Origin: Haliotis rubra
Taxonomy: Eukaryota
Direction: 5' to 3'
Length of the DNA: 64,000 nt
NCBI RefSeq assembly: GCF_003918875.1
Contig: NW_025765772.1
Span: forward strand, 1 to 64,000
The notes under the pieces are model-generated. The model made no database searches, was not told the origin of the DNA, and was given only the letters and a program-made list of their open reading frames with translations. Position numbers and translations under genes: made by a program. This document shows positions 32,101-60,089 of this stretch, piece after piece (the stretch's first letter is position 1; every line of letters begins with the position of its first letter).

Positions 32101-34596
32101 TTTGCCCTGCAAGACTTTGACCAGACATGTAACAAATTGAAGGTTATTTCGGTTTATAATACATTACATTCTCGAATGGGTTTTGTCAAATGGCTCACTG
32201 TCCACCCAACATGTATTGCATAAACTTAAAATCAGGATTTTGGTTGCAGACGGATTGTAATTTCGGCAAATGTTGCACTGAATATTTTCTTCATATCCGC
32301 ATCAGCTAGAAGCCACCATGGCCCTATATTCTCCCTATTAATGGTGCAATAAAGGTTCCTATGTGAAATTTTACATATCTCTCTTTCTTTTATCAGCAGA
32401 ACGCATTTGCATATCTAAAATATATCTGATAAAGTTTAAAGCAGTTATACATCTGTTTTAAATCATAAATGTTTTGTCCCAAATACCTCTAATTAGATTC
32501 TTATTTAACATATCTGTTATAACCTAATAATAATGTCTCATGTCCTCACTAAACTTTTTACATATTTTTTTGTATTTAGCGGGATGTCGCTACATTGTTC
32601 GGCGCATTCATTGTTGTGATGGCGATACCTGGAGTCTATGCTTGCGCAGTAATACGAAGGGCAAAGGGAGACGCTGAGTGTTTTTGCCATTGAACAATAT
32701 GCCAATGGCTCAGTCCAGAAATCAAAGGTTTGTTATGTTAGTTTTGCTGAAATACCAAAATCATGAGTCCTTTAGAACTTTCATATGTATTAATATGTAC
32801 TTAAATATCAGTTTATTACAAGACGCAAATCATTATTGTTGTTACTTGCACATCCACCTCATATTATGTCGCAGAAGTAGTGAAACAAAGTAAAATGTTT
32901 CTACAATTTACAGGCTTACTATTTCCTTATTTACCTTTGGCATTCCATTGTAGATGTTTGCTTTAGGTATTTTGCATGATACAGTAAACATATGAAACTT
33001 TCTAGGAAATAACGTTTTAAAAGCTTCCCTCTGATTGTTGAATTGCAGATTTAAGAATCAGCATGCCAATCATGTCAGATATCTTCATATCAAAGGCGTA
33101 CAGAAGGGGCTGTTAAGGAGCTTCATCCGCGACCGGTGACTACGGTTGTTGTCAATGGAGTAATTTGAACCCCCATTTTTTATTTTTCTGCTAAAAAATT
33201 TAGTTAAATTAGCGAATTATTCATCAGGCTTTGCCTATAAATATAAAAAGGGTAATGCTATTTTTGAGAGGGGCATTATCATTTGCAGAAGCTCCGAGGT
33301 CTTCCATTAACTGCCGACGACGAAGGAGTGCTGTTGAGAAAGATCGAGGGCTTCTGCAAATGATAATACCCTCAAACATTATATTCTTAAAATACATGGA
33401 ATTTGTGTTGAAATGACAAAGGAAACAATAAAGGAATTTGAATAAGTTTACCCAAATCCAACTTCTGATGACGGGGTTGACTGCCGGAATGCATTTACAT
33501 GTCGAACAATTCCAGTGACGTCACAACAGAAAGTGACGATATTAGGGCCTAAGCCGTTGACAAGATACACTATAGCCTGCAACATGTCAGAGCTATAGGC
33601 GGTGTTCAGTTTTAGTCCATCAACAGTCTTAATACTGCATTTGTGAAGGTTAGCACCAACAAGAGAAGCCATTACCGCTATTTAAAGCGGGAATTTGGAG
33701 TTGCTGACTTGTTTGACCCAGAATATGTGCCAGTCGAAAGACAATTAATGTTGAACCATGGCGTCCGCGACAACAGAGACTGATAGCGGTAGAAGCCGTT
33801 AAGGTTGAGGCGGTCCAATATCATTTTGCGGCACGGACCGCAAATTTTCTGATAATGGGAGAGCCGTTTCATGCGATAATTCCATGTATTTTAGCTATAA
33901 TGTATGTATAATACACTATACTGGTATTGAGAAAGCACCATTATGCCATGTGAATGCTTGCTGTATCATTCATTGATTACATTTCAATGAAGTGTTTAAG
34001 AGATTCACATGGAATATTTTCGGTTATTGATTTTTTCATTCCGTTTCCTGTTTGAGGGTGTTTTGTTTCCAGATTGGAATATATTGTACAGCCCTAAACA
34101 ACTTACATGTACTTTATAGTGTGATGATGTAAGTGCACATGTAATTTGCCATGAATCTTGGCAAACTACTGTTGTATTTCATACAATGGCCCTCTTTTAA
34201 TCTAAAGATGTGTCGGATCACACACCAATATTACCAAAGTCCAATGATCATGTAAGTTCATGAGAAATGTTTTTGGCTCAGGTTTACAATTACATGTAAA
34301 TGTTTAAATGTTTACTTGAATCTAAAGAAAACAAGATAATTATGGTATATTTTGTTGTTTAGAAATTCAATCATTTTGTACCCATATGTACACACAAGTA
34401 GATTATTTATATCATAATACTATATAGTCATTTTTTCAAATCACAAATGCTGTTTATCAATGTTTTATCTTACTATTGTAATCTCAAGCTGTTATTAACT
34501 TTCGCATACTATGTTTTAGGACATCATGCATTGTGGTATTGCCCTAATTGCCTATAAATGTTTCGCATGTCTCAGGCCTGTTTTCTTATCCTATAG

Positions 34597-37500
34597 GTGG
34601 AGTTCCATATATCCTTTTGTCAACAGAACATGCTGTGTGTGTCCACATATCTACCCAGTAACTCATCCAACGAGTCATATGCCATTGTCAGCTTAAACTT
34701 TCAAGGTGCAAGGCACTCCATTAGCATGTTCTGTATGCAAAAGGCACCATGCCCACATACGGAGATGCCATCAAGTGTTCTGGGCACTCATTAAGCTAGA
34801 GGTACTGCTAGAAAGAGCTGTTGTCATCAAAACCATCTTTCAGGGCACGATGTGTCCCCTTATCCAATATCAAAAAAAATAGATTTCAGCAGCATGTCTA
34901 GTTTTTCAAGGAAAATATGAGAAACAGTTTTGCCCCAGACACATCGAGCATCTGTGTTTGTGGATCTCCTTGGGGTGAATTAACAGATGGCCTGGACTCA
35001 ATGATGTTCACATAACCACTTCATCCAGTGTTAGAGGGTATGCAGATGTTTTCCTTTTTAATTCCAGTTTACAAAAACATCAATATGTCTAAATTGAGAA
35101 AAAAAAACTGAGCTTCATGTAAGTGGTTTAAATTTCATCATTTATTGAAAGAAGAACATTACACTTGGTCATTTTGTCTGATCAATGTTTATTTTTGCAT
35201 ATTAACAAATTCATGCAAAATTTCAAATTGTTCTTTCCTTGTCCTACCAGTATATCAACATTTGGTTACTGGTTAAACAACAAGACCAACGATAGGGCTT
35301 TTGTTACTTCTTACATTTTTACTTGCTTTAAAGGGTCTAAGTGCTATTCAGGTTCACTCTCACTCAGCCAGAGTCTAACCAAAAAGGTCTTGTTAAAACA
35401 ACATAGAACTATGGCTATGTGAGAACAGAGGGATGCGAGCCAGGTAATAAGAATTAGCCCACTGAAGCATGAGCCTTTGTTCATGGGCTATAGTCGAGTA
35501 TCTACAATGCAACATTATTTAAGATGTATGCAAGTCTGTTGGCGTTTTGTAACATGAAATTTGATTTAAACATATCTATTTCTGATATATTGTTTCCCAC
35601 ACTGTATCGGCAAACAAGCAAAAAGCTTATAATAATGCCTGTCAGACAAAATAACATTTATGGGACTTGTAGTTGTATTGCATAACATTATTACAAAAAG
35701 TACATGATATCATAAAACAATATTAAGCATACAATATAGCATCCATACAGCAGAAATGCTTTAGTAGTTCTGCAAAGGGCTAGATGAAAATTTAAGATTG
35801 ATTAAATATTCTTTAAAGTGATAATAAAGTTATGTACTGATTTCATAATAATATGATGTTTAGATCTAGGTACTTCTAGGTTACCATATGGGCGTCATTT
35901 ATGCTATATCCATGTTTGAAAGAAATCAAATTTTTTATAGGATCATAGTTGTTACATATAAAAGATAATGATTGGTGAAACTTGATAGGTACTGAATTTA
36001 TCTGTGCAGTCAATTTGCGTCTTTTTGAAACCAGAGGCCTAAATCTTTGTGCTCGGAATAATAAATATTTTTGCATAAATAATCTTGGACTAGTTAAAAT
36101 CATTTCACTAATATCACTAATTGAGTATTTCCTGAAATCCTCCAAAAAGAATTCAAATAATACCATATCAATGTATCTCCTTAAATACAGATGTCACTAA
36201 TGTCACCAATTGAGGCATTACCTCAAATCCTCAAAATAATCCTTCAAATAATGCCATGTCAGTGTACAAGTATCTCACATTAATTACAAATTTCTGCTAA
36301 TCTCACTAAGTGAGCAATTTGTTGAAACTTACAGCCAAATCCCTCTGGCTATGTGAGAGACCTGTTTTGACAGAATCTGGCTAAGTAAGAGGACACCGCT
36401 ATTCATGTTATTCGTATAATAAGAAAACATGAAGCAACTTTTCAATTTGTTAAGTTTTTTGAAGACAGTGCAGCAACTGCCAAAGAACAAAAGAATTTGA
36501 TGGTGGGGATCAGCATGTTCTCAACATGGGAACCTATATGGTTTCACACCAAGTCTTTCGACAGTATTCCAAACAGTTCCTCACAGATGGGTAATATGTG
36601 AATTTTTACATTTCATAGGGCATTGAAAGTTGCGCAATCATTATTTAATCTCAGATAAAACTGGAGTGTTAACATGTTAAACTCACACAAAAAATGTTGC
36701 ATAAATCATATTTCAAAAGCAGCAGTAATTGCCCTGCCATTATCTACAGCATATGCTATAAATATACAAATTTTTCCTTATCCTAACTCCTGATCTTTTT
36801 GCTTTATCTCCCTTTCCCTTTCGATTGGTAGTGGAACACTTGAATCCTTGGAGTTTCGAAGCGGACGTATCAATACTCTCCACGAGTTACCTCCCTTCCT
36901 CTTTCCAGCATAAGCGTACCATGTGGCGTGCCCATACTTGTCGCTCTCTCCCTTTTCGCCCAAGCGTATGGTTGGGCGAGCACTGGAGTCCCGTATACGT
37001 CAATTTACCGTTTCTATTTAGGCCTATTCTTTTAAAATAGGCTGTGTATGGATTTGGCTATAATCATTATATAGTATCTGTACAAACTTGTTAAAATATA
37101 TTGACTTTGAATCGTGTTTTCATCGTGTTGTAAACTACAGGGGAAACTCAGGAAGAGGCCGCGGCCCCAGAGCTTCCAGAGGTACCAGACGTTGATGTCA
37201 GAGTTCGGAACGACTGGAGTCTTCCACCCCCACTACACCTGTCACCTACGGAATGGATGCTCCATAAGGGAAATATGATTCCCTTCCATAGACCTGTTTG
37301 CCACGAGGTTCAACAAACAACTACAGACGTTTGTCTCACCAGTTCCAGATCCTCAAGCCTGGGCAACAGATGCACTGAGCATGTCGTGGGAAGGACTAAA
37401 CGCCTGATACTACTGCCAAAAGTATTTGGCTACAACTGACTTTGGTCGCGCCCTTTGGCCAGCAAGAGCATGGTTCCCAGATCTAATAGAAAACCTAGGA

Positions 37501-40500
37501 AGCCCAGTAATCCAGCTTCCATATTGGCCGAACCTACTGATACATCCGCACACCAAGCAAGTCCACAGGAACCCAGCAGTGTTCCAGCTACACGTGTGGA
37601 CAGTATAAAATTGTGTTTGAAAAAGACCTTTTCATAATCTATGGGTTGTTATAAGATATCTAGTACAGGAGAATACTAGTTTATCTATAACCACACGAAT
37701 CAGCATGATTCAACTTGTCTGAGATTGAAGTAAGACAAGGATTGGTCCCCCGAGTTACTACGCATTAAGTTGGAAGAATATGACCAAGGAAATGCGTTCC
37801 CATGGGGATACAGGACGTATTTAAGGACAGCTGTTGAATCCAGTGGCTTGACCCACCACCTATTCCGACGGATTCTATAAGCAAAAGATCATGAGTCAGG
37901 ATAAGTATAAAATATCAATTTTACTCTAAAAATTACATTTTTATACTTATCCTGACTCATGTCGAACAAGACCTCCCAACCTCCCCGTTGAAGACACTTG
38001 TGATTTCACAGCAGAAAGAGGGAAAGAGGAAGGGAGGTAACACATGGGTGAGTATTTATACGTCCGCTTCGGGAACATAAAGGGATTCAAGTGTTCTACT
38101 ACCATTCGAAAGGGAAAGGGAAATAAGCAAAAGATGATGAGTCAGGATAAGTATAAAATATCAATTTTACTTAAAAAATTACATTATCATTCTGTTGATA
38201 TAGTTGTGTAGGATAAAAGCACTTATCTAAATTCCTCTATTTTACAGAACAACGCTGTCTTCTTTTTATAAAACATTGGTGTGGCAGCATGCTGAAAATG
38301 GTGATCAAGAATTCAGTAACCAATTGTCCTACTACAGGTACTAATTTTGTCTGTCATGGCTTGCACAGCAAGTCAAATCATGCAACATTCAATATGTTAG
38401 GGGTTACCAAATATGTCTATTCATACATATATTCATGTATTTTGCCCAGTTTTTATATCCATACACCTACTGTAAAAAGGAAACAAGTTCCTTTGTCAAT
38501 CAAATCGGTATCAACAATCTCAGAAGTCACAATACAATGACTAAAATTATGTTAAATTTTCAGAATCGGCTCCCAAAACTGATCCATGTCTGTACAAAAC
38601 ATTTATTAACACAGGCCTAAAGCCAAGATGGTGTGAAATGATGATCTACCTTGAACATTTTTTTAATAGTGTTTATCATGACGAGAGGTACATCATTGCA
38701 GAAATTGACCTCATATACACAATAACTTCATTATTCATATATTTTCAACATGAATTATCAACACAACATTCACAACATTAACTTTGTCTTTAAGATTCCG
38801 ATATGCATGGTATGCATACTTGGACTTGTTGGATATATCCTATGAGGAGGGCTTCCAGTGCCCCTGCTGTGGGGAGTCACCAGAGGTAGTCATTATGGAT
38901 GGTGTCACCCTGGGGATCAAAAACACCCACATGGACTGGAAGATGCCACAAGAAGAACCACAGAACCTGGATGGAAGATAAGTAACACAACAGTTTCATT
39001 ATTAGTGTTGACAAAGTATCCACAGATTTAATATAGATATGCATTTATATCTAGAATTATATTATTTATATAGTCATGCCAGGATCACTGCACATGGGTG
39101 GAAACAATGACACAACAAAACTCTATGCAATGGTATTGAGTACTATATATCTACAATTCTTGTCACCAAGTGCACATCAAGCATGGTCAGGATGTTAAAC
39201 ACAAGTTGATTCTCACATAGATGCAGCCAAACCTGAGGTGCTATTATACGTCACACATCATTGCTTATATGTCACAATGCTGATCCCAACTTTGAACACT
39301 TACTTTTGTGACAAATGCTTTATGTGCAAATTGTGTTTATACTACTTTCAGCTCTAGGGTCTTTATCAAGAATCAGAGATGTAGAAAGCTGTTGAGGCAG
39401 TTTACAATCCGCATCCTCACCCAACAGGAAATGGCGGAGCTTCAGACGCTGCTGACCACATATGCACCCTTTTTTGGAGCCTTTGTTTTCAGAAATTGGT
39501 TCAAATTTTCATTATGGAAAGTGCCCCAAAATCTTCAGTTCTATCATTTGTACCTTGAGCTCGGATTATCCTTTGTTGGCTTTAATTCATATTGAAGATG
39601 AAATTGTTTTGGATATTCTCATGGATGAGTCTAAAGGGGCAAATTTTAGACATAACATCTCTTACATGGCCATTTTGGAAGATAAAGTCCCAACACTCTT
39701 TTCACTGCTGTCTCATTTTTCAGAAACTCCTGCTTATGTTCGTCCCCTGTTGCTTGCTTTTGTAGAAAATGTGGGTCAGTTTTTGAATGTCGATGAACAT
39801 GATTTAGAGGCATGTACAGCAATTTCAGTCTTCATCTTGAATTGTTAAATGGTTGTTACTTGTTGATAGGTGTTATTTTATGGAGTACGTCGAAAGTAAT
39901 CTGCACCTGAAATTCCTTTTCCATATCCATGATACAAGAATTTCTGATTAATGAATCATTTAGTATTAAATTTTGAATTTGTGTAGCCCAGAAATACATA
40001 AACTTTTCATTATATTTTGTCATGAAATATAACTAAATGGATTTTTACTTTCACCTTATAAAGTAATTTATATTATTTCATAGATTTCTGAATCAGAAGC
40101 ACATCCAGACATGAGGACCCAGTACTTTCCATCACTGAATGTCTGCAACCGGAGAGGCTCATATGTTTTGGATGACAAGAACCAAAGGGGACCCTGCAGG
40201 AAAAGTCCTGGCAGTCATCCTTCACTCACCCCAGGATTGTTCACTTTATCCTGTCAACATGGTGAATGTTGTTTGGCCTTATGTCTCATCAAATAGTTCA
40301 TCATAAAGTTTTATGCAATAGAACTCAATACAAACTTGAATATTTTTTATCATACTTGCAATACATTATACTAATTGCGGTGATTTCATTCAAAAGACAT
40401 TCTATTAATATCAAGGTCACCCAAGGTAATAAAAATGACAAACATTCCAATGTTTTTCTAGTCCATAACTAATAAACCAATAACACAATTATGGGATTAA

Positions 40501-41979
40501 CATGCAGGGTTATAATCTGGGGTGAATGCTTAGAATCCAATCACAAAAACATCTTTTGTAGGTGTGTGCTATGGATTTAGCATGATGCAGGATGCTGAGT
40601 CCCCAAATGTTCCATTCACCCTTCTCCGTACACGGTTCAAGAAAGGTGAGTTGATATCCTTCTTTCAGTTTCTAGAGAGCTCATGCCATTGCATGCTTGT
40701 CTTGTACATGTATTGATAATTACAGCCTTGGGTAAATAAAGTTCACTCAATTGTTTTTCAGCATGTATATATTCTCTACCCTGGTATGGCTGAAACCACT
40801 AGTTTTATCATGCAGAAAATGATGTTTGTGATCAGAGTATGTGTTATTTGAATGTTGCTCTCAGAATTCTTAACTAAATTGAATCACGACTTTGCTGTTA
40901 GCTATGACAATAAAACTTGTATATGTACACACACCCTGCCCAAAGTTTGCATGTAGTTTGAGAAGGTGAGGTGTAGCCCTCGCCTGTGTGTAGACAACAG
41001 ATGAGTTTATACAAAAGATATTACTTAAATACGCAACTTCTTAATGCCTATAATGACCAAAACATTTCAACAGCATATCTATATTCACAGCTCCCAAGAT
41101 GGTCATTTATGACAATGCATGTAACCTGCATGCATATTGTATGAACCGAGATCCAGGTTTTTTTCAAAAACACCTGGTTTGTTGTTGACCGATTCCACTG
41201 GCCAAATCACAAAGGTAACCATTCTTTTTTTAAAGTCAGTTTTCATTATGATTTATTATAAATCATGACAGTAATGCATCATAATATTAATAGCAGTATA
41301 CACAAGCTTTGAAACATCAGGCAAGCATTGAACTGGTACCTTTGTCTGTGTTTTAATTTTCAGTATACAAGAAGTTCAAATGAAGGGTTTTAGTCTTTTG
41401 AATCATTAAATGTTTACCAATACCTTTAAAAAGCACTTTTTCATGAATCAGTAATGTTGTGTGTATGTCATTGTTTTTTACATACATGCTTTTGTCAGTA
41501 ATTTATTTATTTCATCAGCAATATGTTTGGTAATATAACCATTTGGTGGTAGTATACCTGTAACCTAATACTTGTCTGAATGCACAGCATTGTTCTGTGA
41601 CAGTACCATAATTGTCAATACTTCACATATTTTGGTTTGGTAACCATCATAAGTCTCTGGCTACATACCTCTTATGATAATAAAATTCTGAAGTCATTCA
41701 TTGACCTACTTTTTGTTTGCAGGTTGTCATGATGGATACAATCTATCAAAGTACAATAAATACCGAAGCCTGAATACTCAAGTAGCTGAACAACGGAATG
41801 CTACACTGAATAAATTAAGAACTATGCTTTCATACATGAATGTAGACCATTTTATGTCACATTGTAAATTTTATGTTTGGTTTCGAAGCATGGTCTCAAT
41901 GGCAGCAAAGCAAGAAAACAAACTAAAACAGTATACTGCCCTCTTCCAAATTCTATCAAAAGTGTATTCAACGCTATAA
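34597..41979 (+). CDS. Spliced KDZ-family transposase with CxC4-like Cys clusters (HMGXB3-related), disrupted
   Basis: Exons about 34597-35037, 36455-36590, 38248-38278, 38795-38977, 39352-39809, 40084-40261, 40562-40645, 41091-41214 and 41723-41979. Motifs: CVCGSPW, CSNC..FDGGDQHVLNMG, FQCPCCGESPEVVIMDGVTLG, LTPGLFTLSCQHGVCYGFSMMQDAESPNVPF, VIYDNACNLHAYC, VVDRFHWPNHKGC, NTQVAEQRNATL. Frameshifts at ~39470 and ~41160; one donor reads ATAAGT (38978). Confidence 0.85.
35357..36391. mobile_element. Possible MITE in a transposase intron
   Basis: Imperfect ~32-bp inverted pair CTCACTCAGCCAGAGTCTAACCAAAAAGGTCT / AGACCTGTTTTGACAGAATCTGGCTAAGTAAGAG. Confidence 0.45.
36772..38185 (+). mobile_element. 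Internally deleted DIRS1-like tyrosine-recombinase retrotransposon
   Basis: Inverted terminal repeats (36775-36905 vs 38020-38150) and an internal complementary region at 37878-37960 that copies both ends. Coding remnants TEWML, IDLFATRFNKQLQTFVSPVPDPQAWATDALSMSWEGLNA and LWPARAWFPDL are typical of the DIRS RNase H/methyltransferase-like region. Confidence 0.88.
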
Positions 41980-42081
41980 ATAAGAACTTTCATTTTGAAA
42001 TATTGTTCAAACAGGACCATCACTGTACATTGTTATATATGTATAAATTGTTTTCCTTTTCTGGCATACTCACGTTTGTAT

Positions 42082-48339: not shown

Positions 48340-49499
48340 CTGTAGGCGAATAAAATACAAATGATTGTTTAATCTCTAGACTATTTCATATGGCTCTAAG
48401 GTTTCAAAAATATGACTCTTAAAACGCGTTTACTCGAATTTTGTTCTCTGTTAGAGCCACCTCACTTTTGGCAAACAGTGTACCTGTGATGCGCTTAAGC
48501 TATAAAAAGGGGCACTCTACAGTTGTAAGCACCACATGTGATTCATGAAGTGTATTTATCAGAACTGCACTTTTGGCAAACAGTGTACCTGTGTGGCGCT
48601 TAAGTCAGAAAACGGGCACTCGACAGCTGTAAGCGCCACATGTAATTGATGAAGTGTATTTATCAGAACAACCTCACTTTTGGCAAACAGTGTACCTGTG
48701 AGGCGCTTAAGTCAGAAAACGGGCGCTCTACAGCTGTAAGCGCCACATGTGATTCGTGAAGTGTATTTATTATAAACATCTCACTTTTGGCAAACAGTGT
48801 ACCTGTGTGGCGCTTAAGTCAGAAAACGGGCACTCTACAGCTGTAAGCGCCACATGTGATTGATGAAGTGTATTTATCAGAACAACCTCACTTTTGGCAA
48901 ACAGTGTACCTGTGTGGCGCTTAAGTCAGAAAACGGGCACTCTACAGCTGTAAGCGCCACATGTGATTGATGAAGTGTTTTTATCAGAACCATCTCACTT
49001 TTGGCAAACAGTGTACCTGTGAGGCGCTTAAGTCAGAAAACGGGCACTCTACAGCTGTAAGCGCCACATGTGATTGATGAAGTGTATTTATCAGAACCAT
49101 CTCACTTTTGGCAAACAGTGTACCTGTGTGGCGCTTAAGTCAGAAAACGGGCACTCGACAGCTGTAAGCGCCACATGTAATTGATGAAGTGTATTTATCA
49201 GAACAACCTCACTTTTGGCAAACAGTGTACCTGTGTGGCGCTTAAGTCAGAAAACGGGCTCTCTACAGTTGTAAGCGCCACATGTGATTGATGAAGTGTT
49301 TTTATCAGAACCATCTCACTTTTGGCAAACAGTGTACCTGTGAGGCGCTTAAGTCAGAAAACGGGCACTCTACAGCTGTAAGCGCCACATGTGATTGATG
49401 AAGTGTATTTATCAGAACCATCTCACTTTTGGCAAACAGTGTACCTGTGAGGCGCTTAAGTCAGAAAACGGGCACTCTACAGTTGTAAGCGCCACATGT

Positions 49500-51560
49500 G
49501 ATTGGTGAAGTGTATTTATCAGAACCATCTCACTTTTGGCAAACAGTGTACCTGTGTGGCGCTTAAGTCAGAAAACGGGCACTCTACAGCTGTAAACGCC
49601 ATATGTGATTGATGACTGACTGACTGAGTTTGGTTTTACGCCGCTTTTAGCAATATTCCAGCAATATCACGGCGGGGAACACCAGAAATGGGCCTCACTC
49701 ATTGTACCCATGTGGGGATTCGAACCAGGGTCTTCGGCGTGACGAGCCAACGCTTTAACCACTAGACTACCCCACCGCCCCTGTGATTGATGAAGTGTAT
49801 TTATCAGAACCATCTCACTTTTGGCAAACAGTGTACATGTGAGGCGCTTAAGTCAGAAAACGGGCACTCTACAGTTGTAAGCGCCACGTGCCTGCATTTA
49901 CAAAGTGTCTAAACCTTTTGGGACGCATCCCTTCTATGTGAGTAAGTTGGAGGATAATGACAGGGTAGGTTTAAGCAAATGTTCCTGTCTAAATCTACCT
50001 TTCTCATGGCGCTCTCCAAGCCGCAGCATTTCTCGTTGGATTCCTGGCTTATACTTTCGGCTGGTGGCTACGAGTGGGAAAACAAGGGTGTGTCATTGAG
50101 AGGTTCCTGGTAGCATGTTAGATGGTATTCGTTAAGTTTCATATACGACACGAGTTGAAACTAGTTCAAGAAGGACTTGCTACAGGTCACTGATCTTGTA
50201 TAGTTACTCTGGGCGCCTGTTACCATGCTGTATACGTTTATGGCGCTTAAGTCAGAAAACGGGCACTCTACAGCTGTAAGCGCCACATGTGATTGATGAA
50301 GTGTTTTTATCAGAACCATCTCACTTTTGGCAAACAGTGTGCCTGTGTGGCGCTTAAGTCAGAAAACGGGCACTCTACAGCTGTAAGCGCCACATGTGAT
50401 TGATGAAGTGTATTTATCAGAACCATCTCACTTTTGGCAAACAGTGTACCTGTGTGGCGCTTAAGTCAGAAAACGGGCACTCTACAGCTGTAAGCGCCAC
50501 ATGTGATTGATGAAGTGTATTCATGAGAACCATCTCACTTTTGGCAAACAGTGTACCTGTGTGGCGCTTAAGTCAGAAAACGGGCACTCTACAGCTGTAA
50601 GCGCCACATGTGATTGATGAAGTGTATTCATGAGAACCATCTCACTTTTGGCAAACAGTGTACCTGTGAGGCGCTTAAGTCAGAAAACGGGCACTCTACA
50701 GCTGTAAACGCCATATGTGATTGATGACTGACTGACTGAGTTTGGTTTTACGCCGCTTTTAGCAATATTCCAGCAATATCACGGCGGGGGACACCAGAAA
50801 TGGGCCTCACTCATTGTACCCATGTGGGGATTCGAACCCGGGTCTTCGGCATGACGAGCCAACGCTTTAACCACTAGACTACCCCACCGCCCCTGTGATT
50901 GATGAAGTGTATTTATCAGAACCATCTCACTTTTGGCAAACAGTGTACATGTGAGGCGCTTAAGTCAGAAAACGGGAACTCTACAGTTGTAAGCACCACG
51001 TGCCTGCATTTACAAAGTGTCTAAACCTTTTGGGACGCATCCCTTCTATGTGAGTAGGTTGGAGGATAATGACGGGGTAGGTTTAAGCAAATGTTCCTGT
51101 CTAAATCTACCTTTCTCATGGCGCTCTCCAAGCCGCAGCATTTCTCGTTGGATTCCTGGCTTATACTTTCGGCTGGTGGCTACGAGTGGGAAAACAAGGG
51201 TGTGTCATTGAGAGGTTCCTGGTAGCATGTTAGATGGTATTCGTTAAGTTTCATATACGACACGAGTTGAAACTAGTTCAAGAAGGACTTGCTACAGGTC
51301 ACTGATCTTGTATAGTTACTCTGGGCGCCTGTTACCATGCTGTATACGTTTATGGCGCTTAAGTCAGAAAACGGGCACTCTACAGCTGTAAGCGCCACAT
51401 GTGATTGATGAAGTGTTTTTATCAGAACCATCTCACTTTTGGCAAACAGTGTGCCTGTGTGGCGCTTAAGTCAGAAAACGGGCACTCTACAGCTGTAAGC
51501 GCCACATGTGATTGATGAAGTGTATTTATCAGAACCATCTCACTTTTGGCAAACAGTGCA
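49500..51560. repeat. 1112-bp tandem segmental duplication
   Basis: Near-identical unique block at 49905 and 51017, including the SINE and flanking satellite units. Confidence 0.9.
49616..49781 (-). mobile_element. tRNA-derived short SINE inserted in the satellite, 12-bp TSD
   Basis: Flanked by TGTGATTGATGA on both sides; duplicated at 50728-50893. Confidence 0.9.
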
Positions 51561-52381
51561 CCTGTGTGGCGCTTATAAGTCAGAAAACGGACACTCTACA
51601 GCTGTTAGCGCCACATGTGATACATGAAGTGTATTTATTATAAACATCTCACTTTTGGCAAACAGTGCACCTGTGTGGCGCTTATAAATCAGAAAACGGA
51701 CACTCTACAGCTGTAAGCGCCACTTTCCATTGGTACTGTGTATTTATCAGAAACATCTCACTGTTTAGGTAAGGAAACGTGCTCACTACACCTGTAAGCG
51801 CCATAAGTTCATCAACAAGCAGTAAACGGGTAAATGAGATTTGTGAAGGCCACATGGCATTGATCCTGTGTGTTTATTACTTGCATTGTAATTGAAGCAG
51901 GCATTTAATATGTGGTACAAATACAAAAAAAATCAGCAGAATTCCAGATGCAACATGGATGTATGTGATGTTTATTACATGGCAGATTGTTTTATTGACC
52001 TGTTACCTTTCTGACGCACAATGAATATATGCTTTAATGCTTTGTTGTTATGAATGATTTTACTTACTAGGTTCTTGTTGATTATCTGTTCAAGCTAAAA
52101 TATAAATATAGCCATTAGACACAAAGCTATAAGACAAAAAAATATGTAATGTGAGGATAATTTACTTTGAATATGGGTGCCGAAATGCACTTAGTGGTAA
52201 ACAATTCAATTAAATGTTGAAATTATTACAATTAACTTTATATCATTCAAAAATTATTGATTCATTACATAACGAAGTTAGTGTATAAACTATAAAATAA
52301 GAAACATAATTGTAGACATTGGCAACTCTGATGAGTAGCTACCAGCTATTCAATATATGATATGACATGTTCTATTGAACC

Positions 52382-52547
52382 GGGCGATGGGGTAGCCTAG
52401 TGGTTAAAGCGTTGACTAGTCATTGCGAAGACCCGGGTTCGATTCCCCACATGGGCACAATGTGTTAAGCCCATTTCTGGTGTCCCCCGCCGTGATATTG
52501 CTGGAATATTGCTAAAAGCGGCGTAAAACTAAACTCAGTCAGTCAGT
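52382..52547 (+). mobile_element. tRNA-derived short SINE with TSD
   Basis: Full-length copy flanked by TCTATTGAA. Confidence 0.85.
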
Positions 52548-53154
52548 CTATTGAAGTACAGATGCTCTTGTTAGCTGCGCATAGTGAGAACACCAAGGAA
52601 AGACACAAACTATAACCCTAATATTCCATAATATATTTTAATGTCATTGTTTGCATTGTTTTCTTATCTAACAAAACATACAAAAATGATTATGTTTGAT
52701 GTACATTCAAAGTATATAAACTAAAAAAACCTAATATGTTTTGCTCAATTAAGAACAATTAAGAACAATTAAGAACTGTGGAAATCTGATCGAGAGTTTC
52801 GGGGTAAGAACTTTGGAAATTAGCAAAGTTGCCAGATTGATATTGGGCGGATTACCTGCACAATGTAAAAGTTACCTACAGTTAATGGAGTATTGTGTAC
52901 ATTGCACGCTGGAGTGATGGTGTAGGTGAGTCACGTCTATATCAAGACAGTGCTCTAGAGATATGTTGGTTAGTATTGTGAAAACTGAAAGGAAAAGGAA
53001 CCATTAAATAGAAACTTCAACAAACAACGCAAATACAGAGATAATACCACTTCATGGCTATCGGCCGAATTGACATAACCGCTAGAATTAAGTTTCTGAA
53101 AAAGGAATAAATAGAATCAATTTCCGTTCGTAATTTGTCAACAATGAAAGTTAC

Positions 53155-55273
53155 TCAAAACAAGGCCCGTGAGGGAGAACCCTTAAGACAGGCTCCTGAA
53201 CTATAACTCGGCTAGAGAGATAATTTAAAATATACTTTAATTTATGGTTTTCAGAAAAAGAATATAATATATCATGTATATTACCGATATCACGTGGCGT
53301 TTCCAGCTGCACATGATATGTCTGAGGTTGGATGCCGTCTGCAGCCGATGTTTAGTGCCAGCTGAGATCGAAGATTATTGTGATTATTAACACCTTATTT
53401 GTTTCTATAATTGTAAAGTGTAACCAATATGCATGAGCATGAATATTATTTACAACTTAATCACTGAAAACAACTTTTAGAATGACACAATATAATTACA
53501 AAAACACTTTTATTATTTTTTGAATAAATAATACATATGATACAGGTTGCATTGAACCCCCCTTCTTCAACAATCGTGTTAATGCCCCTTATTGACGACT
53601 TCTACACGAAGCATCCACATGAAAGCAATAACATGTTTCTCAGTAGCACTATATACTGTGTGCGGACTACAGCGAGGACCGTGTTGAGAAGAACATTAAC
53701 TAAATATATCATTGCTCATTGCTATATTTATTTCCATATGAATTCTTAAGGATACAGTTGGAAAAAAGTACTTATTGATTCTTTGCGAGGCATGTGGTAT
53801 GCGTTGGAAGGACATGGAGACAACTGTCTATTGCTGGTAAGGACGTACCAGTGCTACTTCTGGGTACGTGATTAGGTGGCTGTTATGCAGAAGTTGTTTT
53901 CCATTAAAAGGTCATGTACTTGAGATTATTAGTACATGACCTTAATTAACATCGATTTTCATTCTGGGAAAGAAGTGGACTTTACATAATTTCCATTCCT
54001 GAGTAAAAGTTTGAGATAAGGAGATTTGTGTGAAAAGCATACCATCGTCCGTGTGTGTTGCTGAGGGCGCCACAAACGGCACACCCTCAGGCCACCAAGA
54101 AGGCCGAAGGCCTTCGTTTCCCCAAATACATCGGGATCCCTTGGCACCTGGGAACAACAGGATAGATTATATCATATATGTTACATCGCAGGTAATTCGA
54201 ATGATATGGTATATATAATACTGAATAATGTTTTCTTATGTGTGACGATACACAAGCATGCACGCACGCACCCAAAACGCACAGACTTTACCTTTGTCAA
54301 TTGTGACCTGAGTGACCGCTCGTCTTAATAGGTGGACGTCCCGGACGTCGGCGTAGTCCACCGCCATGGATATACGTCGAAGGTCGACTTTTTCCTCTAA
54401 AAATATTTCAAATTAAATAAGGTGGTATTTAACATGATATATGTTATGCTCTTACTGTAAGTAAAGTATGAGGAGTGAGAGCACGTACCTTCCTGAGTGG
54501 TAGCGGGCGCTACCGGTGCAATATTCAGTATGTTAACCAGGTTGCTGCGGCCAACAGCCTCAACCATATCTTGGTGTCCTGTTTTAATATAATTAAGTTA
54601 AAAGGCATTAAAAAGCTTTAAGTGATTGTATTTTATGGTAAAGCGATGAGACGCGAGTTTTTTCAATAGATAGTCCACTTACTTATGTATAATATATATT
54701 ACAATATGGGAACGAAATGTTATTTCAATTGAGCGAAACGGTTTTTTTATATTAGCACATATACTTTGTTTTTAAATACTATATCAGTAATTAAGAAGTT
54801 CAGCATTGACGAGAGCTCTATTTGTGTACACCCAAGACGGCATGTCAGGCTATTCGACATTAACAATCTGGATATGATTTCAGATGAAATGTAAAAAAAG
54901 CATACCAACAACCTTCAATGTTCCCTCGGTTGTGAGGTGCACAAGGGCCATTTGTGGCATCCCTTGAATTTTACCAAAATTCCGCACCTTAATGTAAAGT
55001 AAGGCAAGTAAAACAACAATGATAAAGAATTTGAATATATTGTATTTATTTCATATAGAAAAATATGTATTCTCTAGGGAAGCTTATAAAATGTAAACTT
55101 TATAGGGCATGAACGAAGGGCATGAACGAATACGAACACAAACTTAGTGATTAGCACAACATAAATATACGTAGACAGTGTCTTAAAGTTAAAAAACATA
55201 CCCTTTGCCTCAATCTCCCCATTCTTTTCCTGGCATTCGCCCGTTTTCGTTTGTATTCAGGGACTGGATTGTT
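53155..55273 (-). CDS. Spliced gene encoding an NRF1/Erect-wing/P3A2-like DNA-binding domain protein; start exon not resolved
   Basis: Phase-consistent GT-AG exons 55273-55202, 54987-54906, 54578-54489, 54396-54292, 54147-54043, 53361-53285 and 53211-53155. They give RANARKRMGRLRQRVRNFGKIQGMPQMALVHLTTEGTLKVVGHQDMVEAV ... GSRCIWGNEGLRPSWWPEGVPF ... NLRHIMCSWK, comparable to NRF1 RLLRKLR..QAIVL..FKVFG..WGKESCKPIWWPEDIPW..ALRTIVKNCYK. Confidence 0.72.
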
Positions 55274-55414
55274 CTATATCAACACATGAAACGAACTATT
55301 ATGATACTGGAAAGAGTATTACAATACTAACTAAATAAAACTAAAATATATATACGGGTTTGACAAGTTTGTATAGCTGTGTGCCCTCCCGCCCAGCCCT
55401 TGATGTAACAATAC

Positions 55415-58400
55415 TGTAACGCTACGGTACTTACTGTAATGCCACAGTGCTTACTGCAATGCTACAGTGCTTACTGTAATGCTGCGGTGCGTACTGTTCC
55501 ATCTACGGTGCTTACTGTAATGCTACGGTGCTTACTGTGCCATCTAGGATGCTTACTGTAATGCTATGGTGCTTACTGCAATGCTACAGTGCTTACTGCA
55601 ATGCTACAGTGCTTACTGTAATGCTACAGTGCTTAATGTAATGCTACAGTGCTTACTGTAATGCTACAGTGCTTACTGTAATGCTACAGTGCTTAATGTA
55701 ATGCTACAGTGCTTACTGTAATGCTACAGTGCTTACTGTAATGCTACAGTGCTTAATGTAATGCTACAGTGCTTACTGTAATGCTACAGTGCTTACTGTA
55801 ATGCTACAGTGCTTAATGCTGTGCTTAATGTAATGCTACAGTGCTTACTGTAGTGCTGTAATGCTACAGTGCTTACTGTAATGCTACAGTGCTTACTGTA
55901 ATGCTACAGTGCTTAATGTAATGCTACAGTGCTTAATGTAATGCTACAGTGCTTAATGTAATGCTACAGTGCTTACTGTAATGCTACAGTGCTTACTGTA
56001 ATGCTACAGTGCTTACTGTAATGCTACGGTGCTTACTGTAATGCTACAGTGCTTACTGTAATGCTACAGTGCTTAATGTAATGCTACAGTGCTTAATGTA
56101 ATGCTACAGTGCTTACTGTACCGCTACCGTGCTTACTGTAATGCTACGGTGCTTACTGTAATGCTACGGTGCTTACTGTAATGCTACAGTGCTTACTGTA
56201 ATGCTACGGTGCGTACTGTACCATCTAGGGTGCTTACTGTATTGCTACAGTGCTTACTGTAGTGCTACAGTGCTTACTGTAATGCTACAGTGCGTACTGT
56301 ACCATCTAGGGTGCTTACTGTATTGCTACAGTGCTTACTGTAATGCTACGGTGCTTACTGTACCGCTACGGTGCTTACTGTACCGCTACGGTGCGTACTG
56401 TACCATCTAGGGTGCTTACTGTAATACTGCGGTGCTTACTGTAATGCTACGGTGCTTACTGTAATGCTACAGTGCTTACTGTAATGCTACGGTGCGTACT
56501 GTACCATCTACGGTGCTTACTGTAATGCTACGGCGCTTACTGTAATGGTACGGTGCTTCCTGTACTGCTACGGTGCTTCCTTACTGTAATGCTATGTGCA
56601 GCCCTTAATGTAATGCTACAACCCTTACTGTAATGCTACAGTACTAACTGTTATGCTACAGTACTAACTGTTAGATAGATAGATATTCTTTATTTCCTCC
56701 ATAAAATTACAAGATTACATTTGTATGGTAAACAACAGTACATAAAACTTTCTAATTATTAGTACTTATATTATACAGTAATATTCAATTGTGAAAGAAC
56801 TGAAGGTATCTATGAGCATTGCCGGAGTATGCTCTCCCAACTGCGAACAGAGAGACTAATCATTACCACCAGTTCTGACCAAACATTATAATCCAGTACA
56901 TCCTTACAGTGGTCAGGTATACCTCCGAGGAGGAATGACACGAATACATCATCGTGTTCCATCCACATTTTAACAAAAATGTCTATGTCAAGAGTATCAC
57001 AGATTCTTTCAAATAGAGAATTCCTTTCTACTAAGTTATGCTGGCATGACATAAAAACATGTTTCATAATGCCGTGAGCAAATGTTCCGCATAGACATTC
57101 CTTTGATTCTATTGGAGTTGCACCAAGCCTTATTATTCTATAATGCTACAGTACTAACTATTATGCTACAGTACTAACTGTTGTAAGGCTACAATCCTTC
57201 CTTACTGTAATGCTACAGTACTAACTGTTATGCTACAGTACTAACTGTTGTAAGGCTACAATCCTTCCTTACTGTAATGCTACAGTACTAACCGTTATGC
57301 TACAGTACCAACTGTTATGCTACAGTACTAACTGTTATGCTACAGTACTAACTGTTGTAAGGCTACAATCCTTCCTTACTGTAATGCTACAGTACTAACT
57401 GTTATGCTACAGTACTTATTGTAAGGCTACAATCCTTCCTTACTGTAATGCTACAGTACTAACTGTTATGCTACAGTACTTATTGTAAGGCTACAATCCT
57501 TCCTTACTGTAATGCTACAGTACTAACCGTTATGCTACAGTACTAACTGTTATGCTACAGTACTAACTGTTATGCTACAGTACTTATTGTAAGGCTACAA
57601 TCCTTCCTTACTGTAATGATACAGTACTAACCGTTATGCTACAGTACTTATTGTAAGGCTACAATCCTTCCTTACTGTAATGCTACAGTACTAACTGTTA
57701 TGCTACAGTACTTATTGTAAGGCTACAATCCTTCCTTACTGTAATGCTACAGTACTAACCGTTATGCTACAGTACCAACTGTTATGCTACAGTACTAACC
57801 GTTATGCTACAGTACTTATTGTAAGGCTACAATCCTTCCTTACTGTAATGCTACAGTACTAACTGTTATGCTACAGTACTAACTGTTGTAAGGCTACAAT
57901 CCTTCCTTACTGTAATGCTACAGTACTAACCGTTATGCTACAGTACCAACTGTTATGCTACAGTACTAACTGTTATGCTACAGTACTAACTGTTATGCTA
58001 CAGTACTTATTGTAAGGCTACAATCCTTCCTTACTGTAATGCTACAGTACTAACCGTTATGCTACAGTACTAACTGTTGTAAGGCTACAATCCTTCCTTA
58101 CTGTAATGATACAGTACTAACCGTTATGCTACAGTACTAACTGTTGTAAGGCTACAATCCTTCCTTACTGTAATGCTACAGTACTAACCATTATGCTACA
58201 GTACTAACTGTTATGCTACAGTACTAACTGTTATGCTACAGTACTAACTGTTATGCTACAGTACTAACTGTTATGCTACAGTACTAACTGTTATGCTACA
58301 GTACTAACTGTTATGCTACAGTACTAACTGTTATGCTACAGTACTAACTGTTATGCTACAGTACTAACCGTTATGCTACAGTACTAACTGTTATGCTACA

Positions 58401-58545
58401 GTACTAACTGTTATGCTACAGTACTAACTGTTATGCTACAGTACTAACTGTTATGCTACAGTACTAACCGTTATGCTACAGTACTAACTGTTATGCTACA
58501 GTACTTATTGTAAGGCTACAATGCTTCCTTACTGTAATGCTACAC
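55415..58545. repeat. ~20-bp minisatellite with two subdomains and higher-order variants
   Basis: ATGCTACAGTGCTTACTGTA to ~56600, then ATGCTACAGTACTAACTGTT interspersed with GTAAGGCTACAATCCTTCCTTACT. Confidence 0.95.
56673..57140 (-). mobile_element. 5'-truncated LINE 3' end inserted in the minisatellite
   Basis: Minus strand gives CLCG....MKHVFMSC (C-terminal CCHC of ORF2), a stop, AATAAA and an (ATCT)n tail. Confidence 0.75.
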
Positions 58546-60089
58546 TATTTACTCAGCATCTTCGGTGATTTTAAGGGATAATAGAATTATGTACATAACT
58601 GAGTTTTAATATACATAATATGTTTGAAAGGAAACGTTCACGCTCACTCTTCTTGAAATAGGGAGGTAAAACAAAGAAAGGCAGGACACGACCAGTGGTT
58701 TCAAATGCATGCTGATTGGCTAAATGACATCAAAGTAAATACAGGTCACTGTGACGTCGTTGCACTATACCTCTACAATAATCAAGGGTAAACATTGTGT
58801 ATTTGATATGTTACAATGTTGTAACAAATAACATTAACAGCTGTTTTGCGCATGTTACACATGTAATTTGGAACTAATTCATTGTTTGTTTAGCTAACTA
58901 GGTTTACTTTTTATTACTTCTATTACTGTGTGTATATTTACTGAAGGTGGCTGTGTGGACTAATACATGAAATGCATGTATGTAGATTTCCTTTACAACG
59001 TTATTCACATGGCTACATGCGTCTTTCTTCCCTTTTTGGAAGGAAAGGCCGTATCCGTGGTATAGTAGTAGAGGTAGTGGGTTCAGTATGGGGCCGCGTC
59101 ATACCAAATGACGTTGACATAAGTTACTTGTTGTTACCCTGCCTTGCGCTCGTTTTTAGGGGTTACTGAGTGGGCTTTCACTAAAATAGACATTAGTATT
59201 GACTGGTACAAGAAGCAACACACATACGCTTGTTCACGTAGCCATATAAGTGCTATTATATTGAGCGCAGGGTAAACCCCATTATATCATATTTTCATTA
59301 ATGGCGACGTCATAGTGGTACACTTGACAGTAGGCTAGTGTGACCGTGGGTAATTATTTCCAGTATACGAAACCCGAGTGCAGTAAAATTTATATCGGGC
59401 AAGCAGTAATAGTGATTATGTTCAAAGAAATTACATAACGTTAGACTGATTCATATACACTCGTGGGACACGTCGGCGTAAAAACGTTTAGAAACGTAAG
59501 AACGTTTAGACCAAAGACGTATATACACGCGAATATACGTGTTTGAATAACCGTAAAAAAACACCGTAAATATATGGTATACATTATCTGTAACAATATG
59601 CTGAAGTGTGTGACAGAATAATAAGTATACCTTTACAACCCCCTTCTTAACACATGCTGATTTTTTCATGGTGATGATACACTGGTTTGTAGCCGTTAAA
59701 ATATGAATGATAAATAGATTTTTGAATTTTTGTTTATGTGTTGGTGCGGTTATGATTTTAGTGAGCGCTGCCATATACAGGCAGATAAGATGCGTGGTAT
59801 GGCGAGACAGACCCAAGTTGTAAAAAATGGGAAAAACATTGTGAGAGATTATAAATATTTTTTTCATTAGATCTACACAAGGTTTGTGACAGGTGATAGA
59901 TTGCACAAAATACATGCACAATACAGATATTATGTTTAAATATGTTTCTTGTATTGAAAAGTTTAGAATTGGCAGCAGAGTAATGAGTTCTCCCTCAACG
60001 AACTGATCTCGCGAGACGTGAGGTGATACGGCGAGAGTTGTGGCGCTTATAGCGGGCGCTTAGTTGAAAATGAGTTGCTATCATACCTC

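What the first reader, a model, noticed from the sequence alone, without database searches (positions are those of the whole stretch)
32550..60065. Candidate giant three-gene KDZ transposon: transposase, OTU-like/Ulp1 protease and NRF1-like DNA-binding protein
Seen: a spliced KDZ transposase (+) whose stop (41979) lies ~100 bp from the stop (42082) of a convergent spliced Ulp1 gene, then an NRF1-like DBD gene on the minus strand, with element-private satellites in and between these genes. Known: Zisupton/KDZ elements are large, spliced and can carry SWIM and Ulp1 domains, usually within the transposase protein. Inference: this is one ~25-27 kb mobile unit with separate accessory genes, a combination I do not recognise as described. 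The protease could counter SUMO-dependent silencing and the DBD could recognise element ends.
Basis: partly seen in the sequence, partly recalled or inferred. Interest (0 to 1): 0.85.

Follow-up and report, generated by a model that had tools for sequence, protein, structure and literature searches.

The report
KDZ transposon with protease partner gene
This stretch of abalone DNA holds an old jumping gene of the KDZ/Zisupton kind whose transposase gene lies tail-to-tail with a second, expressed gene for protein-tag-removing proteases. The pairing recurs in a distant relative, but it is not shown that the whole 27 kb moves as one three-gene unit.

Summary
The core observation holds. A multi-exon KDZ transposase gene (+, at least 36463-41979) ends 102 bp from the stop of a convergent multi-exon gene (-, 42082 to about 46957). 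That second gene carries a Ulp1 (C48) catalytic exon and an OTU-like ORF. Spliced contigs from two RNA-like runs show that both genes are transcribed and spliced.

The NRF1-like assignment rests on one 22-residue motif.

The KDZ/Ulp1 convergent pairing recurs in an unrelated metagenome contig (L014), so the two genes form a unit. The scan's own unchecked notes list one or two other loci in this genome with the same gene set.

Several results argue against a currently mobile 27-kb element:
- I found no convincing TIR or TSD.
- The two DNA runs hold no version of the KDZ exons at 88% identity or more besides this locus.
- A second abalone species holds the locus at about 98% identity.
- All 7 listed variants in 640 nt of KDZ coding sequence are synonymous.

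I read it as an old, fixed, low-copy KDZ element with an accessory protease gene, still constrained and perhaps domesticated. Candidate ends are an inverted 23-nt GCGCC-doublet motif at 26982 and 60063. It is a new variant of a known kind and of moderate interest.

The parts
36463..41979 (+). KDZ (Zisupton-like) transposase gene, the part that could be traced. It comprises a CxC4-like exon at 36463-36591, a conserved block at 38793-38930, an exon at about 39332-39807, then exons 40083-40261, 40562-40645, 41091-41214 and 41723-41979 (stop).
   Evidence: RNA joints. The loose end of a spliced contig maps to 39780-39807. The atlas gives 38 of 60 hits as PF18758 KDZ for the last exon. CxC4 hit at E=0.017. 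Exons are 45-58% identical to metagenome KDZ loci, of which L020 scores PF18758 at 5e-9 and L017 scores CxC4 at 1e-10.
41152..41158 (+). T-run with one extra T in the window. It causes an apparent frameshift in a KDZ exon.
   Evidence: '41158 left out 1' in all four runs. All relatives read through in one frame.
39469..39474 (+). Second frame switch in a T-run of a KDZ exon. Probably the same kind of assembly error, but not verified.
   Evidence: P0002 aligns colinearly across frames 2 and 3 here. This stretch was not in the reads laid.
36804..38126 (.). Nested repeat bounded by 44-, 27- and 25-nt inverted repeats, inside a KDZ intron.
   Evidence: Inverted-repeat pairs I8, I14 and I15. No Pfam hit on its ORFs. 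'DIRS-like' is my recollection only.
42082..46957 (-). Convergent protease gene. Last exon 42085-42186 (stop 42082-42084), Cys exon 42457-42525, a short exon ending at 43118, His exon 43658 down to about 43593, exons 44589-44645, 45299-45385 and 45725-45825, a piece at 46092-46119, and the OTU-like ORF 46611-46826.
   Evidence: CT..AC joints in X7/X9. The loose end maps to 46092. Peptidase_C48 E=0.0087 on the 23-aa exon. OTU-like atlas lead at 0.90. Open in-frame exon models exist for the uncovered middle part.
42681..43040 (.). High-copy dispersed repeat inside an intron of the protease gene.
   Evidence: Word depth rises to 9,000-34,000 against about 150-300 beside it, with many loose ends at 42681 and 42928.
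43663..44368 (.). 69-bp minisatellite (10.3 copies) in the intron next to the His exon. Its units are copies of the exon edge and translate as ..THWYLLAVAPENAWV... An echo lies at 47143-47349.
   Evidence: TRF. The intron 43659-44588 is spliced out. Unit translations. Self-blast at 93%. The depth roughly equals copy number times single-copy depth, so the array is mostly private to this locus.
48453..51762 (.). 107-bp satellite in three blocks. Each unit is a hairpin with arms GTGGCGCTTA / TAAGCGCCAC. The array is split by SINE insertions and a 1112-bp duplication.
   Evidence: TRF, pattern search, self-blast.
53945..54166 (-). ORF with an NRF1/EWG-type motif (WG.E...P.WWPE..P).
   Evidence: Pfam PF10491 E=0.0067. 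PDB NRF1 8k3d E=0.003. Atlas top cluster is Nrf1_DNA-bind, mollusc, 0.87.
55412..58520 (.). Two 20-bp satellite arrays (55412-56671 and 57143-58520) flanking an ORF (56813-57145, -) that looks like a LINE C-terminal fragment.
   Evidence: TRF. ORF listing. No Pfam hit. The LINE reading is recollection only.
26982..27004 (+). Candidate left terminal motif, CTAAGCGCC-N6-ACGCGCCA.
   Evidence: One of only two matches in 64 kb on both strands, with 0 expected in shuffles. The core 11-mer is otherwise confined to the 107-bp satellite.
60041..60063 (-). Candidate right terminal motif, CTAAGCGCC-N6-AAGCGCCA, inverted relative to the left one.
   Evidence: The flanking 7-mers GAATATG / GAAAATG are offset by 1-2 nt and are not significant.

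Best explanation
The region is an old, low-copy copy of a multi-exon KDZ (Zisupton-like) DNA transposon. Its transposase gene (an N-terminal CxC4 zinc cluster plus the KDZ catalytic domain) is paired tail-to-tail with an accessory gene for a deconjugating protease. That protease has a Ulp1/C48 domain, probably preceded by an OTU-like domain.

Shown:
- Both genes exist, are spliced and are transcribed.
- RNA-like contigs run unbroken from 41721 to 42189, across both stop codons. Contigs carry no strand, so overlap of the two 3' ends is likely rather than shown.
- The KDZ/Ulp1 convergent pairing recurs in a distant relative.

Inferred:
- The transposase cuts and pastes the unit.
- The protease removes SUMO or ubiquitin from host proteins. 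This would blunt SUMO-dependent silencing or help repair after excision, as proposed for the Ulp1/OTU domains of Ginger1, MULE and Helitron elements.
- The NRF1-like exons upstream on the same strand encode a DNA-binding partner or module.

This copy is probably no longer mobile as a 27-33 kb unit. It is swollen by satellites, SINEs and other insertions, and it is fixed in two abalone species. Its transposase reading frame is nevertheless still under purifying selection.
For: KDZ identity:
- The atlas gives PF18758 for the last exon.
- Exons are 45-58% identical to loci whose long ORFs score Pfam KDZ at 5e-9 and CxC4 at 1e-10.
- The window's own CxC4 exon scores E=0.017.

Transcription and splicing: canonical joints appear only in the RNA-like runs X7 and X9, on both strands.

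Ulp1 identity:
- C48 hit on the Cys exon.
- The His motif THWYLLAV and the N-terminal WLDD motif lie in spliced exons.

Unit character:
- L014 has a KDZ last exon on + and a C48 exon on - (E=1e-4, above the curated cut-off). That exon starts at the same VPKQ residue as the window's exon.
- The motif Q.N..DCG occurs once in 83 kb of loci and once in the window.
- Run X1 holds a second version of 44567-45157 at 92-93% identity.
- Scan notes list other loci with the same gene set.

Precedent:
- KDZ elements carry separate accessory genes in fungi (PMC12730594).
- Zisupton is multi-exonic (PMC9297572).
- Ulp1/OTU domains occur in Ginger1, MULE and Helitron elements (PMC2836005).

Constraint: 7 of 7 listed variants in the KDZ coding sequence are synonymous, against an expected synonymous share of 0.21.
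Against: - No TIR of 14 nt or more with an 8-bp TSD flanks the genes. The candidate 23-nt inverted motif was found post hoc and has no clear TSD.
- The DNA runs of two species each hold only one contig at 88% identity or more over the KDZ exons. A recent burst is therefore excluded, and copy number could not be measured.
- Only one related locus reached far enough downstream to show Ulp1. The other one that did, L009, shows none.
- None of the 18 loci shows NRF1-like or OTU-like sequence.
- The protease exons show 5 non-synonymous to 3 synonymous variants, so there is no sign of constraint.
- The position of the catalytic Asp seems to hold Cys. This rests on an alignment to SENP1/Ulp1 recalled from memory.
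- The spliced proteins could not be searched, because there is no reference for them.
Confidence: 0.55

Rival explanations
1. Domesticated gene pair. The KDZ-derived gene, with or without its protease neighbour, is now a single-copy host gene kept by selection for a host function, and no longer part of any mobile element. This does not exclude a transposon origin.
For: - Only one contig at 88% identity or more in each DNA run.
- Organism B holds the locus at about 98% identity with colinear introns.
- The gene is spliced and expressed.
- 7 of 7 listed coding variants are synonymous, which is not expected for a dead insertion at a fixed locus.
- No TIR or TSD was found.
- The one frameshift that reads could test is an assembly error.
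Against: - Only 640 nt and 7 variants were examined, from a list cut to the best supported.
- The two species may be very close.
- The N-terminal half of the gene was not traced.
- Other loci with the same gene set are noted in this genome, which fits a family rather than a single gene.
- The protease gene shows no constraint.
- The inverted terminal motif pair suggests that ends are retained.
Confidence: 0.25
2. An active giant three-gene transposon: one unit of 25-33 kb that still moves with transposase, protease and NRF1-like genes.
For: - Intact-looking, expressed transposase and protease genes.
- An inverted GCGCC-doublet motif at 26982 and 60063 brackets all three genes, and its core is amplified in the internal 107-bp satellite.
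- The same gene set is noted elsewhere in the genome.
Against: - No other version of the KDZ exons at 88% identity or more.
- The locus is shared by two species.
- The unit holds SINE, LINE-like and other nested insertions and three private satellites.
- No TSD was found.
- The NRF1-like link is untested.
Confidence: 0.1
3. Chance neighbourhood. A KDZ remnant, an unrelated Ulp1/OTU gene and an NRF1-like fragment merely lie side by side in a repeat-rich intergenic region.
For: - The region is a mosaic of repeats.
- The NRF1-like and OTU-like assignments are weak.
- No shared ends are proven.
Against: - The convergent KDZ/Ulp1 pairing recurs in L014 with the same exon start.
- The two stops lie 102 bp apart, and RNA-like contigs run unbroken across both.
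- The same combination is noted at other loci.
Confidence: 0.1

Closest known systems
Zisupton / KDZ superfamily DNA transposons (Bohne et al. 2012; Iyer et al. 2014; Kojima 2025, PMC12730594)
   Same: KDZ catalytic domain, an N-terminal CxC zinc cluster, a multi-exon transposase gene, and large size. In fungi, KDZ elements carry a separate accessory gene (TET/JBP) thought to counter silencing.
   Different: Here the accessory gene is a convergent OTU-like/Ulp1 protease gene, possibly with an NRF1-like DNA-binding gene. No 8-bp TSD or clear TIR could be shown. I found no paper in the held library describing this combination.
Ginger1, MULE (KAONASHI-type) and animal Helitron elements with Ulp1 or OTU domains (PMC2836005)
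   Same: DNA transposons that carry SUMO or ubiquitin deconjugating protease domains. The proposed role is in transposition, repair or escape from host control.
   Different: In those elements the protease is usually a C-terminal domain of the transposase or of the Rep/Hel protein. Here it is a separate, oppositely oriented, multi-exon gene, and the transposase is of another superfamily.
PIF/Harbinger two-gene elements (transposase plus Myb-like DNA-binding protein)
   Same: The idea that a second gene supplies a DNA-binding subunit that recognises the element's ends.
   Different: The binding module would be NRF1/EWG-like, not Myb/SANT. The link to the element is untested. The residue aligned with base-contacting N242 of NRF1 (PMC10810270) is not conserved here, and R244 lies just outside that alignment.
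Domesticated transposase genes
   Same: Single locus, shared between species, expressed, open frame, synonymous-biased variation.
   Different: Only two close species and 640 nt were examined. An accessory TE-type gene is still attached, and possible terminal motifs are still present.

Membership tests
KDZ / Zisupton transposon | KDZ transposase catalytic domain (PF18758) | tested here: met
   Window exons are 45-58% identical to L020, L018 and L017 (local tblastn down to E=9e-63). L020 scores PF18758 at 5e-9 and L018 at 5.5e-6. The atlas gives 38 of 60 hits as KDZ. Single window exons are too short to score in Pfam themselves.
KDZ / Zisupton transposon | N-terminal CxC cysteine cluster | tested here: met
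   36463-36591 scores CxC4 at E=0.017. It is 49% identical to the L017 segment that scores CxC4 at 1e-10.
KDZ / Zisupton transposon | Terminal inverted repeats | tested here: inconclusive
   No TIR of 14 nt or more. A 23-nt inverted GCGCC-doublet pair at 26982 and 60063 is unique in the window, but it was found post hoc.
KDZ / Zisupton transposon | Target site duplication of 8 bp (7 bp in Kyakuja) | tested here: not met
   No 8-bp match. The best is 6 of 7 (GAATATG / GAAAATG), offset by 1-2 nt, with a chance level of about 0.1. An old insertion could have lost its TSD.
KDZ / Zisupton transposon | Several copies at different sites, or insertion polymorphism | not testable with these tools
   Only the window and contigs laid on 6 kb were available. 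One contig at 88% or more over the KDZ exons, and a second 92-93% version of 44567-45157 in X1. Other loci are known only from unchecked scan notes.
Ulp1 / SENP (Peptidase C48) | Catalytic Gln and Cys motif (Q.N..DCG) | tested here: met
   VPKQTNGRDCGVF in exon 42457-42525. Pfam C48 E=0.0087, profile positions 162-178.
Ulp1 / SENP (Peptidase C48) | Catalytic His and Asp | tested here: inconclusive
   His sits in THWYLLAV in a spliced exon. The position expected for Asp reads LCSMG instead of LDSMG, by an alignment to SENP1 and yeast Ulp1 recalled from memory. No profile alignment was possible on the spliced protein. A scan note reports the same Asp-to-Cys change at another locus.
OTU deubiquitinase | OTU domain with catalytic Cys and His | tested here: inconclusive
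   Atlas lead only: rank 3 'OTU-like' at 0.90, with 9 of 10 family hits in one clan. Pfam and PDB sequence searches were blank. No catalytic Cys exon was found.
NRF1 / EWG DNA-binding domain (PF10491) | Full DBD (human residues 201-284) with base-contacting R206, N242 and R244 | tested here: inconclusive
   Only about 22 residues match. With the 50 ORFs, about 0.3 hits at that E-value are expected by chance. The N242 position reads Ala. The other exons give no match. The atlas top cluster is Nrf1_DNA-bind in molluscs.
Domesticated transposase gene | Orthologous single-copy locus under purifying selection | tested here: inconclusive
   Held by two organisms at about 98% identity. 7 of 7 listed coding variants are synonymous. 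Only two organisms and 640 nt were examined, and synteny beyond 6 kb was not tested.

The most novel reading that the evidence does not exclude
Molluscs harbour a lineage of giant, intron-rich KDZ transposons that carry their own accessory genes. One encodes a dual OTU/Ulp1 deconjugating protease in which Cys replaces the catalytic Asp. Another encodes an NRF1-type DNA-binding protein. The ends of the element and an internal 107-bp hairpin satellite share one GCGCC motif, which would serve as the binding platform. In abalone, one such copy is fixed and its transposase is kept under purifying selection, so it is on the way to becoming a host gene.
Probability: 0.3. Interest if true: 0.65.

Novelty: new variant of a known kind. 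Interest (0 to 1): 0.5.

Why it matters
KDZ/Zisupton elements are among the least studied DNA transposons in animals. Accessory genes have so far been documented for them only in fungi (TET/JBP). A separate protease gene that removes SUMO or ubiquitin, kept next to the transposase in distant relatives, would be a second, independent case of a KDZ element carrying an anti-silencing or repair tool. It would extend the recurring link between DNA transposons and the SUMO/ubiquitin system. The synonymous-only variation in an expressed transposase at a fixed locus also makes this a candidate for transposase domestication in molluscs. That can be tested directly with the abalone genomes already public.

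Tried and rejected
Searches that returned nothing useful:
- All three homologous-protein searches used exon-sized queries and found no candidate. That tool sees only proteins of similar length.
- The one representative-library search, with the 130-aa exon, gave 4 weak hits, three of them KDZ-like fragments on short contigs.
- Exact look-ups of window ORFs and of an L014 ORF found nothing.
- Pfam on single exons was mostly blank.

Readings I dropped:
- I first took ORF 44879-45133 ('HWAIVYMD') for the Ulp1 His exon. RNA joints show it is intronic.
- ORF 59454-60059 (202 aa) has no match and looks non-coding.
- A TIR/TSD search between 25-38.7 kb and 42-64 kb gave only chance-level AT-rich or SINE pairs.
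- L020's convergent 432-aa ORF has no Pfam hit and no likeness to the window's genes.
- GCGC recognition by the NRF1-like module is weakened because a base-contacting residue is not conserved (PMC10810270).

Steps left out because a long string had no reference:
- Searching, Pfam-scanning or folding the spliced KDZ, protease and NRF1-like proteins as whole sequences.

Papers not held:
- Bohne 2012 and Iyer 2014.
Full report
**What is there**

The window is abalone DNA, according to the scan's own notes.
- ORFs resembling NCAPG exons lie on the + strand up to about 13.5 kb.
- A BTB-like ORF lies on the - strand at 23.9-24.8 kb. Neither reading was tested with a tool.
- From about 36.4 kb onward the region is AT-rich and full of repeats.

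**The transposase gene**

Stop-free pieces on the + strand between 38.7 and 42 kb carry motifs typical of KDZ transposases, but single exons are too short for Pfam. I laid contigs of four public runs on 40001-46000. The two small RNA-like runs of organism A (X7, X9) showed canonical GT..AG skips, and the two DNA runs did not. These skips fix the exons 40083-40261, 40562-40645, 41091-41214 and 41723-41979. A loose end of one spliced contig maps to 39780-39807, which fixes the preceding exon end.

The window has an apparent frameshift inside the third of these exons. All four runs lack one T at 41158, and every relative reads through in one frame. It is therefore an assembly error. Read as in the runs, the last 213 codons are open and end at 41977-41979. 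A second frame switch in a T-run at about 39470 is probably the same kind of error but was not covered by reads.

Family membership rests on three lines of evidence:
- The protein atlas gave PF18758 (KDZ) for 38 of 60 neighbours of the last exon.
- A metagenome scan with that exon returned 18 loci whose sequences are 45-58% identical to the window's exons. One of them, L020, is an intronless 1066-aa ORF scoring Pfam KDZ at 5e-9. Another, L017, scores the KDZ-associated CxC4 cluster at 1e-10.
- The window's ORF 36463-36591 is 49% identical to that CxC4 segment and scores CxC4 at E=0.017 itself.

The gene therefore spans at least 36463-41979, with a nested repeat (36804-38126, bounded by 44-nt inverted repeats) in an intron. 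Loci L003-L008 share the window's exon boundaries, as expected for the multi-exon Zisupton lineage (PMC9297572). The N-terminal part upstream of 36463 was not found.

**The protease gene**

The same RNA-like runs show CT..AC skips, which are introns of a gene on the - strand: 42186/42457, 42525/43118, 43658/44589, 44645/45299 and 45385/45725. A further loose end maps to 46092. Joined, the exons read through three Ulp1 landmarks:
- an N-terminal '..LANEWLDDHVV..' motif;
- a His motif 'THWYLLAV';
- a catalytic exon 'VPKQTNGRDCGVF', followed by the stop at 42082-42084.

The 23-residue catalytic exon alone hits Pfam Peptidase_C48 at E=0.0087, at the right profile positions. The ORF 44879-45133 looks like a His exon but lies in an intron. 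The middle of the domain (43593-43118) is not covered by joints, although open in-frame models exist.

Where SENP1 and yeast Ulp1 have the catalytic Asp (LDSMG), this gene reads LCSMG. That alignment is from memory. A scan note reports the same change at another locus.

Upstream, ORF 46611-46826 has OTU-like neighbours in the atlas, but Pfam and PDB sequence searches find nothing.

The two stops are 102 bp apart, and RNA-like contigs run unbroken from 41721 to 42189. The two 3' ends therefore probably overlap, although contigs do not show the strand.

**The NRF1-like part**

Only ORF 53945-54166 (-) matches NRF1. It shares a 22-residue 'WG.E...P.WWPE..P' stretch:
- Pfam PF10491, E=0.0067;
- PDB 8k3d, E=0.003;
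- atlas top cluster, an 83-aa mollusc Nrf1_DNA-bind cluster, at 0.87.

These are three views of one motif, not three independent results. alone scanned 50 ORFs, and about 0.3 hits at that E-value are expected by chance among them. The other proposed exons match nothing. In human NRF1 the DBD is residues 201-284 and binds a TGCGC half-site through R206, N242 and R244 (PMC10810270). The position aligned with N242 reads Ala here. I rate the assignment probable but not secure. I could not tell whether these exons belong to the protease gene or to a third gene.

**One unit?**

For:
- In L014 the KDZ last exon (48% identical) lies on the + strand at 455-640. At 4334-4384 on the - strand there is an exon beginning 'VPKQPNSYDCGVF'. 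It scores Peptidase_C48 at E=1e-4, above the curated cut-off.
- The motif Q.N..DCG occurs once in all 83 kb of loci and once in the window, and both exons start at the same residue. The convergent KDZ/Ulp1 pairing is thus conserved between distant relatives.
- Run X1 also holds a second version of 44567-45157 at 92-93% identity and half the depth.
- Unchecked scan notes describe the same gene set at one or two other loci in this genome.

Against, or open:
- L009 is the only other locus reaching more than 3 kb downstream. It shows a LINE insertion and no Ulp1.
- No locus shows NRF1-like or OTU-like sequence.

**Ends**

No inverted repeat of 14 nt or more with an 8-bp duplication brackets the genes, and nothing marks 32550.

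Its hairpin-arm 11-mer TAAGCGCCACA occurs outside the array only at 26983 (+) and 60039-60049 (-). Both sites fit CTAAGCGCC-N6-A[AC]GCGCCA, a pattern found nowhere else in the window. They are inverted and enclose all three genes.

This gives a candidate 33-kb element with its terminal motif amplified inside. However, the pattern was derived post hoc, and the best flanking duplication is 6 of 7, offset by 1-2 nt, which is about chance level.

**Age and state**

- Over the KDZ exons, each DNA run holds a single contig at 88% identity or more. Depth is flat at the level of the neighbouring sequence.
- Organism B holds the stretch at about 97-99% identity, with colinear introns.
- The unit contains SINE copies that also occur in the NCAPG introns, a high-copy repeat, a LINE-like fragment and three satellites.
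- The depth over the 69-bp array is about copy number times single-copy depth, so that array is private to this locus.
- All 7 variants listed in 640 nt of KDZ coding sequence are synonymous, where 21% would be expected. The protease exons show 5 non-synonymous to 3 synonymous.
- The variant list was cut to the best supported, so this is suggestive rather than final.

Together this describes an old, fixed copy whose transposase is still constrained. It is either a long-lived low-copy element or a gene on the way to domestication.

**Comparison and verdict**

Several features are already known:
- multi-exon KDZ genes (PMC9297572);
- separate accessory genes in fungal KDZ elements, with 8-bp or 7-bp TSDs (PMC12730594);
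- CxC clusters thought to bind DNA or chromatin (PMC12062965);
- Ulp1/OTU domains in Ginger1, MULE and Helitron elements (PMC2836005).

I found no paper describing a KDZ element with a separate convergent OTU/Ulp1 gene or an NRF1-like partner.

The finding is real in its core. It is overstated as to limits, mobility and the third gene. It is best filed as a new variant of a known kind.

Noticed in passing
window 43593-44588 and 47143-47349: The 69-bp minisatellite in the protease intron is built from copies of the edge of the His exon; its units translate as ..THWYLLAVAPENAWV... The whole array is spliced out. A two-unit echo with a pseudo-exon lies 3.5 kb upstream. The scan noted similar satellites that multiply splice sites in the NCAPG introns of this window.
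   Followed up: partly
window 41152-41158 and 39469-39474: Homopolymer T-runs in the assembly carry indel errors that mimic frameshifts in coding exons. One is proven by four runs and one is inferred. Apparent pseudogenes in this genome should be checked against reads.
   Followed up: partly
window 44567-45157: Run X1 (organism A) holds two versions of this intron and exon stretch: one about 99.5% identical at depth about 170, and one 92-93% identical at depth about 83. Organism B has only one. This suggests a partial paralogue or a hemizygous second copy.
   Followed up: no
window 49606-51800: A tRNA-derived SINE is inserted into the 107-bp satellite, and the SINE-plus-satellite block was then duplicated with a period of 1112 bp. 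Copies of the same SINE sit in the NCAPG introns (6126-6286, 9282-9389, 10528-10685, 11892-12053).
   Followed up: partly
window 41721-43538: RNA-like contigs cover this stretch without splicing, at the same depth as the KDZ exons. The KDZ mRNA may therefore have a 3' UTR of about 1.5 kb lying antisense to the last protease exons, which could be a source of double-stranded RNA.
   Followed up: no
window 19354-19557 and 60093-60280: A 205-bp dispersed repeat (86% identical, same orientation) lies just outside the candidate right end and also in the NCAPG-BTB interval.
   Followed up: no
L020:437-4921: An intronless 1066-aa KDZ ORF from a GC-rich metagenome contig is followed by a convergent 432-aa ORF with no Pfam match. 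It may be another kind of accessory gene, or an antisense artefact.
   Followed up: partly
L009:662-3169 and 4662-4919: A LINE (endonuclease plus RT ORFs) is inserted right after the KDZ last exon of this relative. Further on lies an ORF with a P-loop motif (IGQDRSGKTSL).
   Followed up: no
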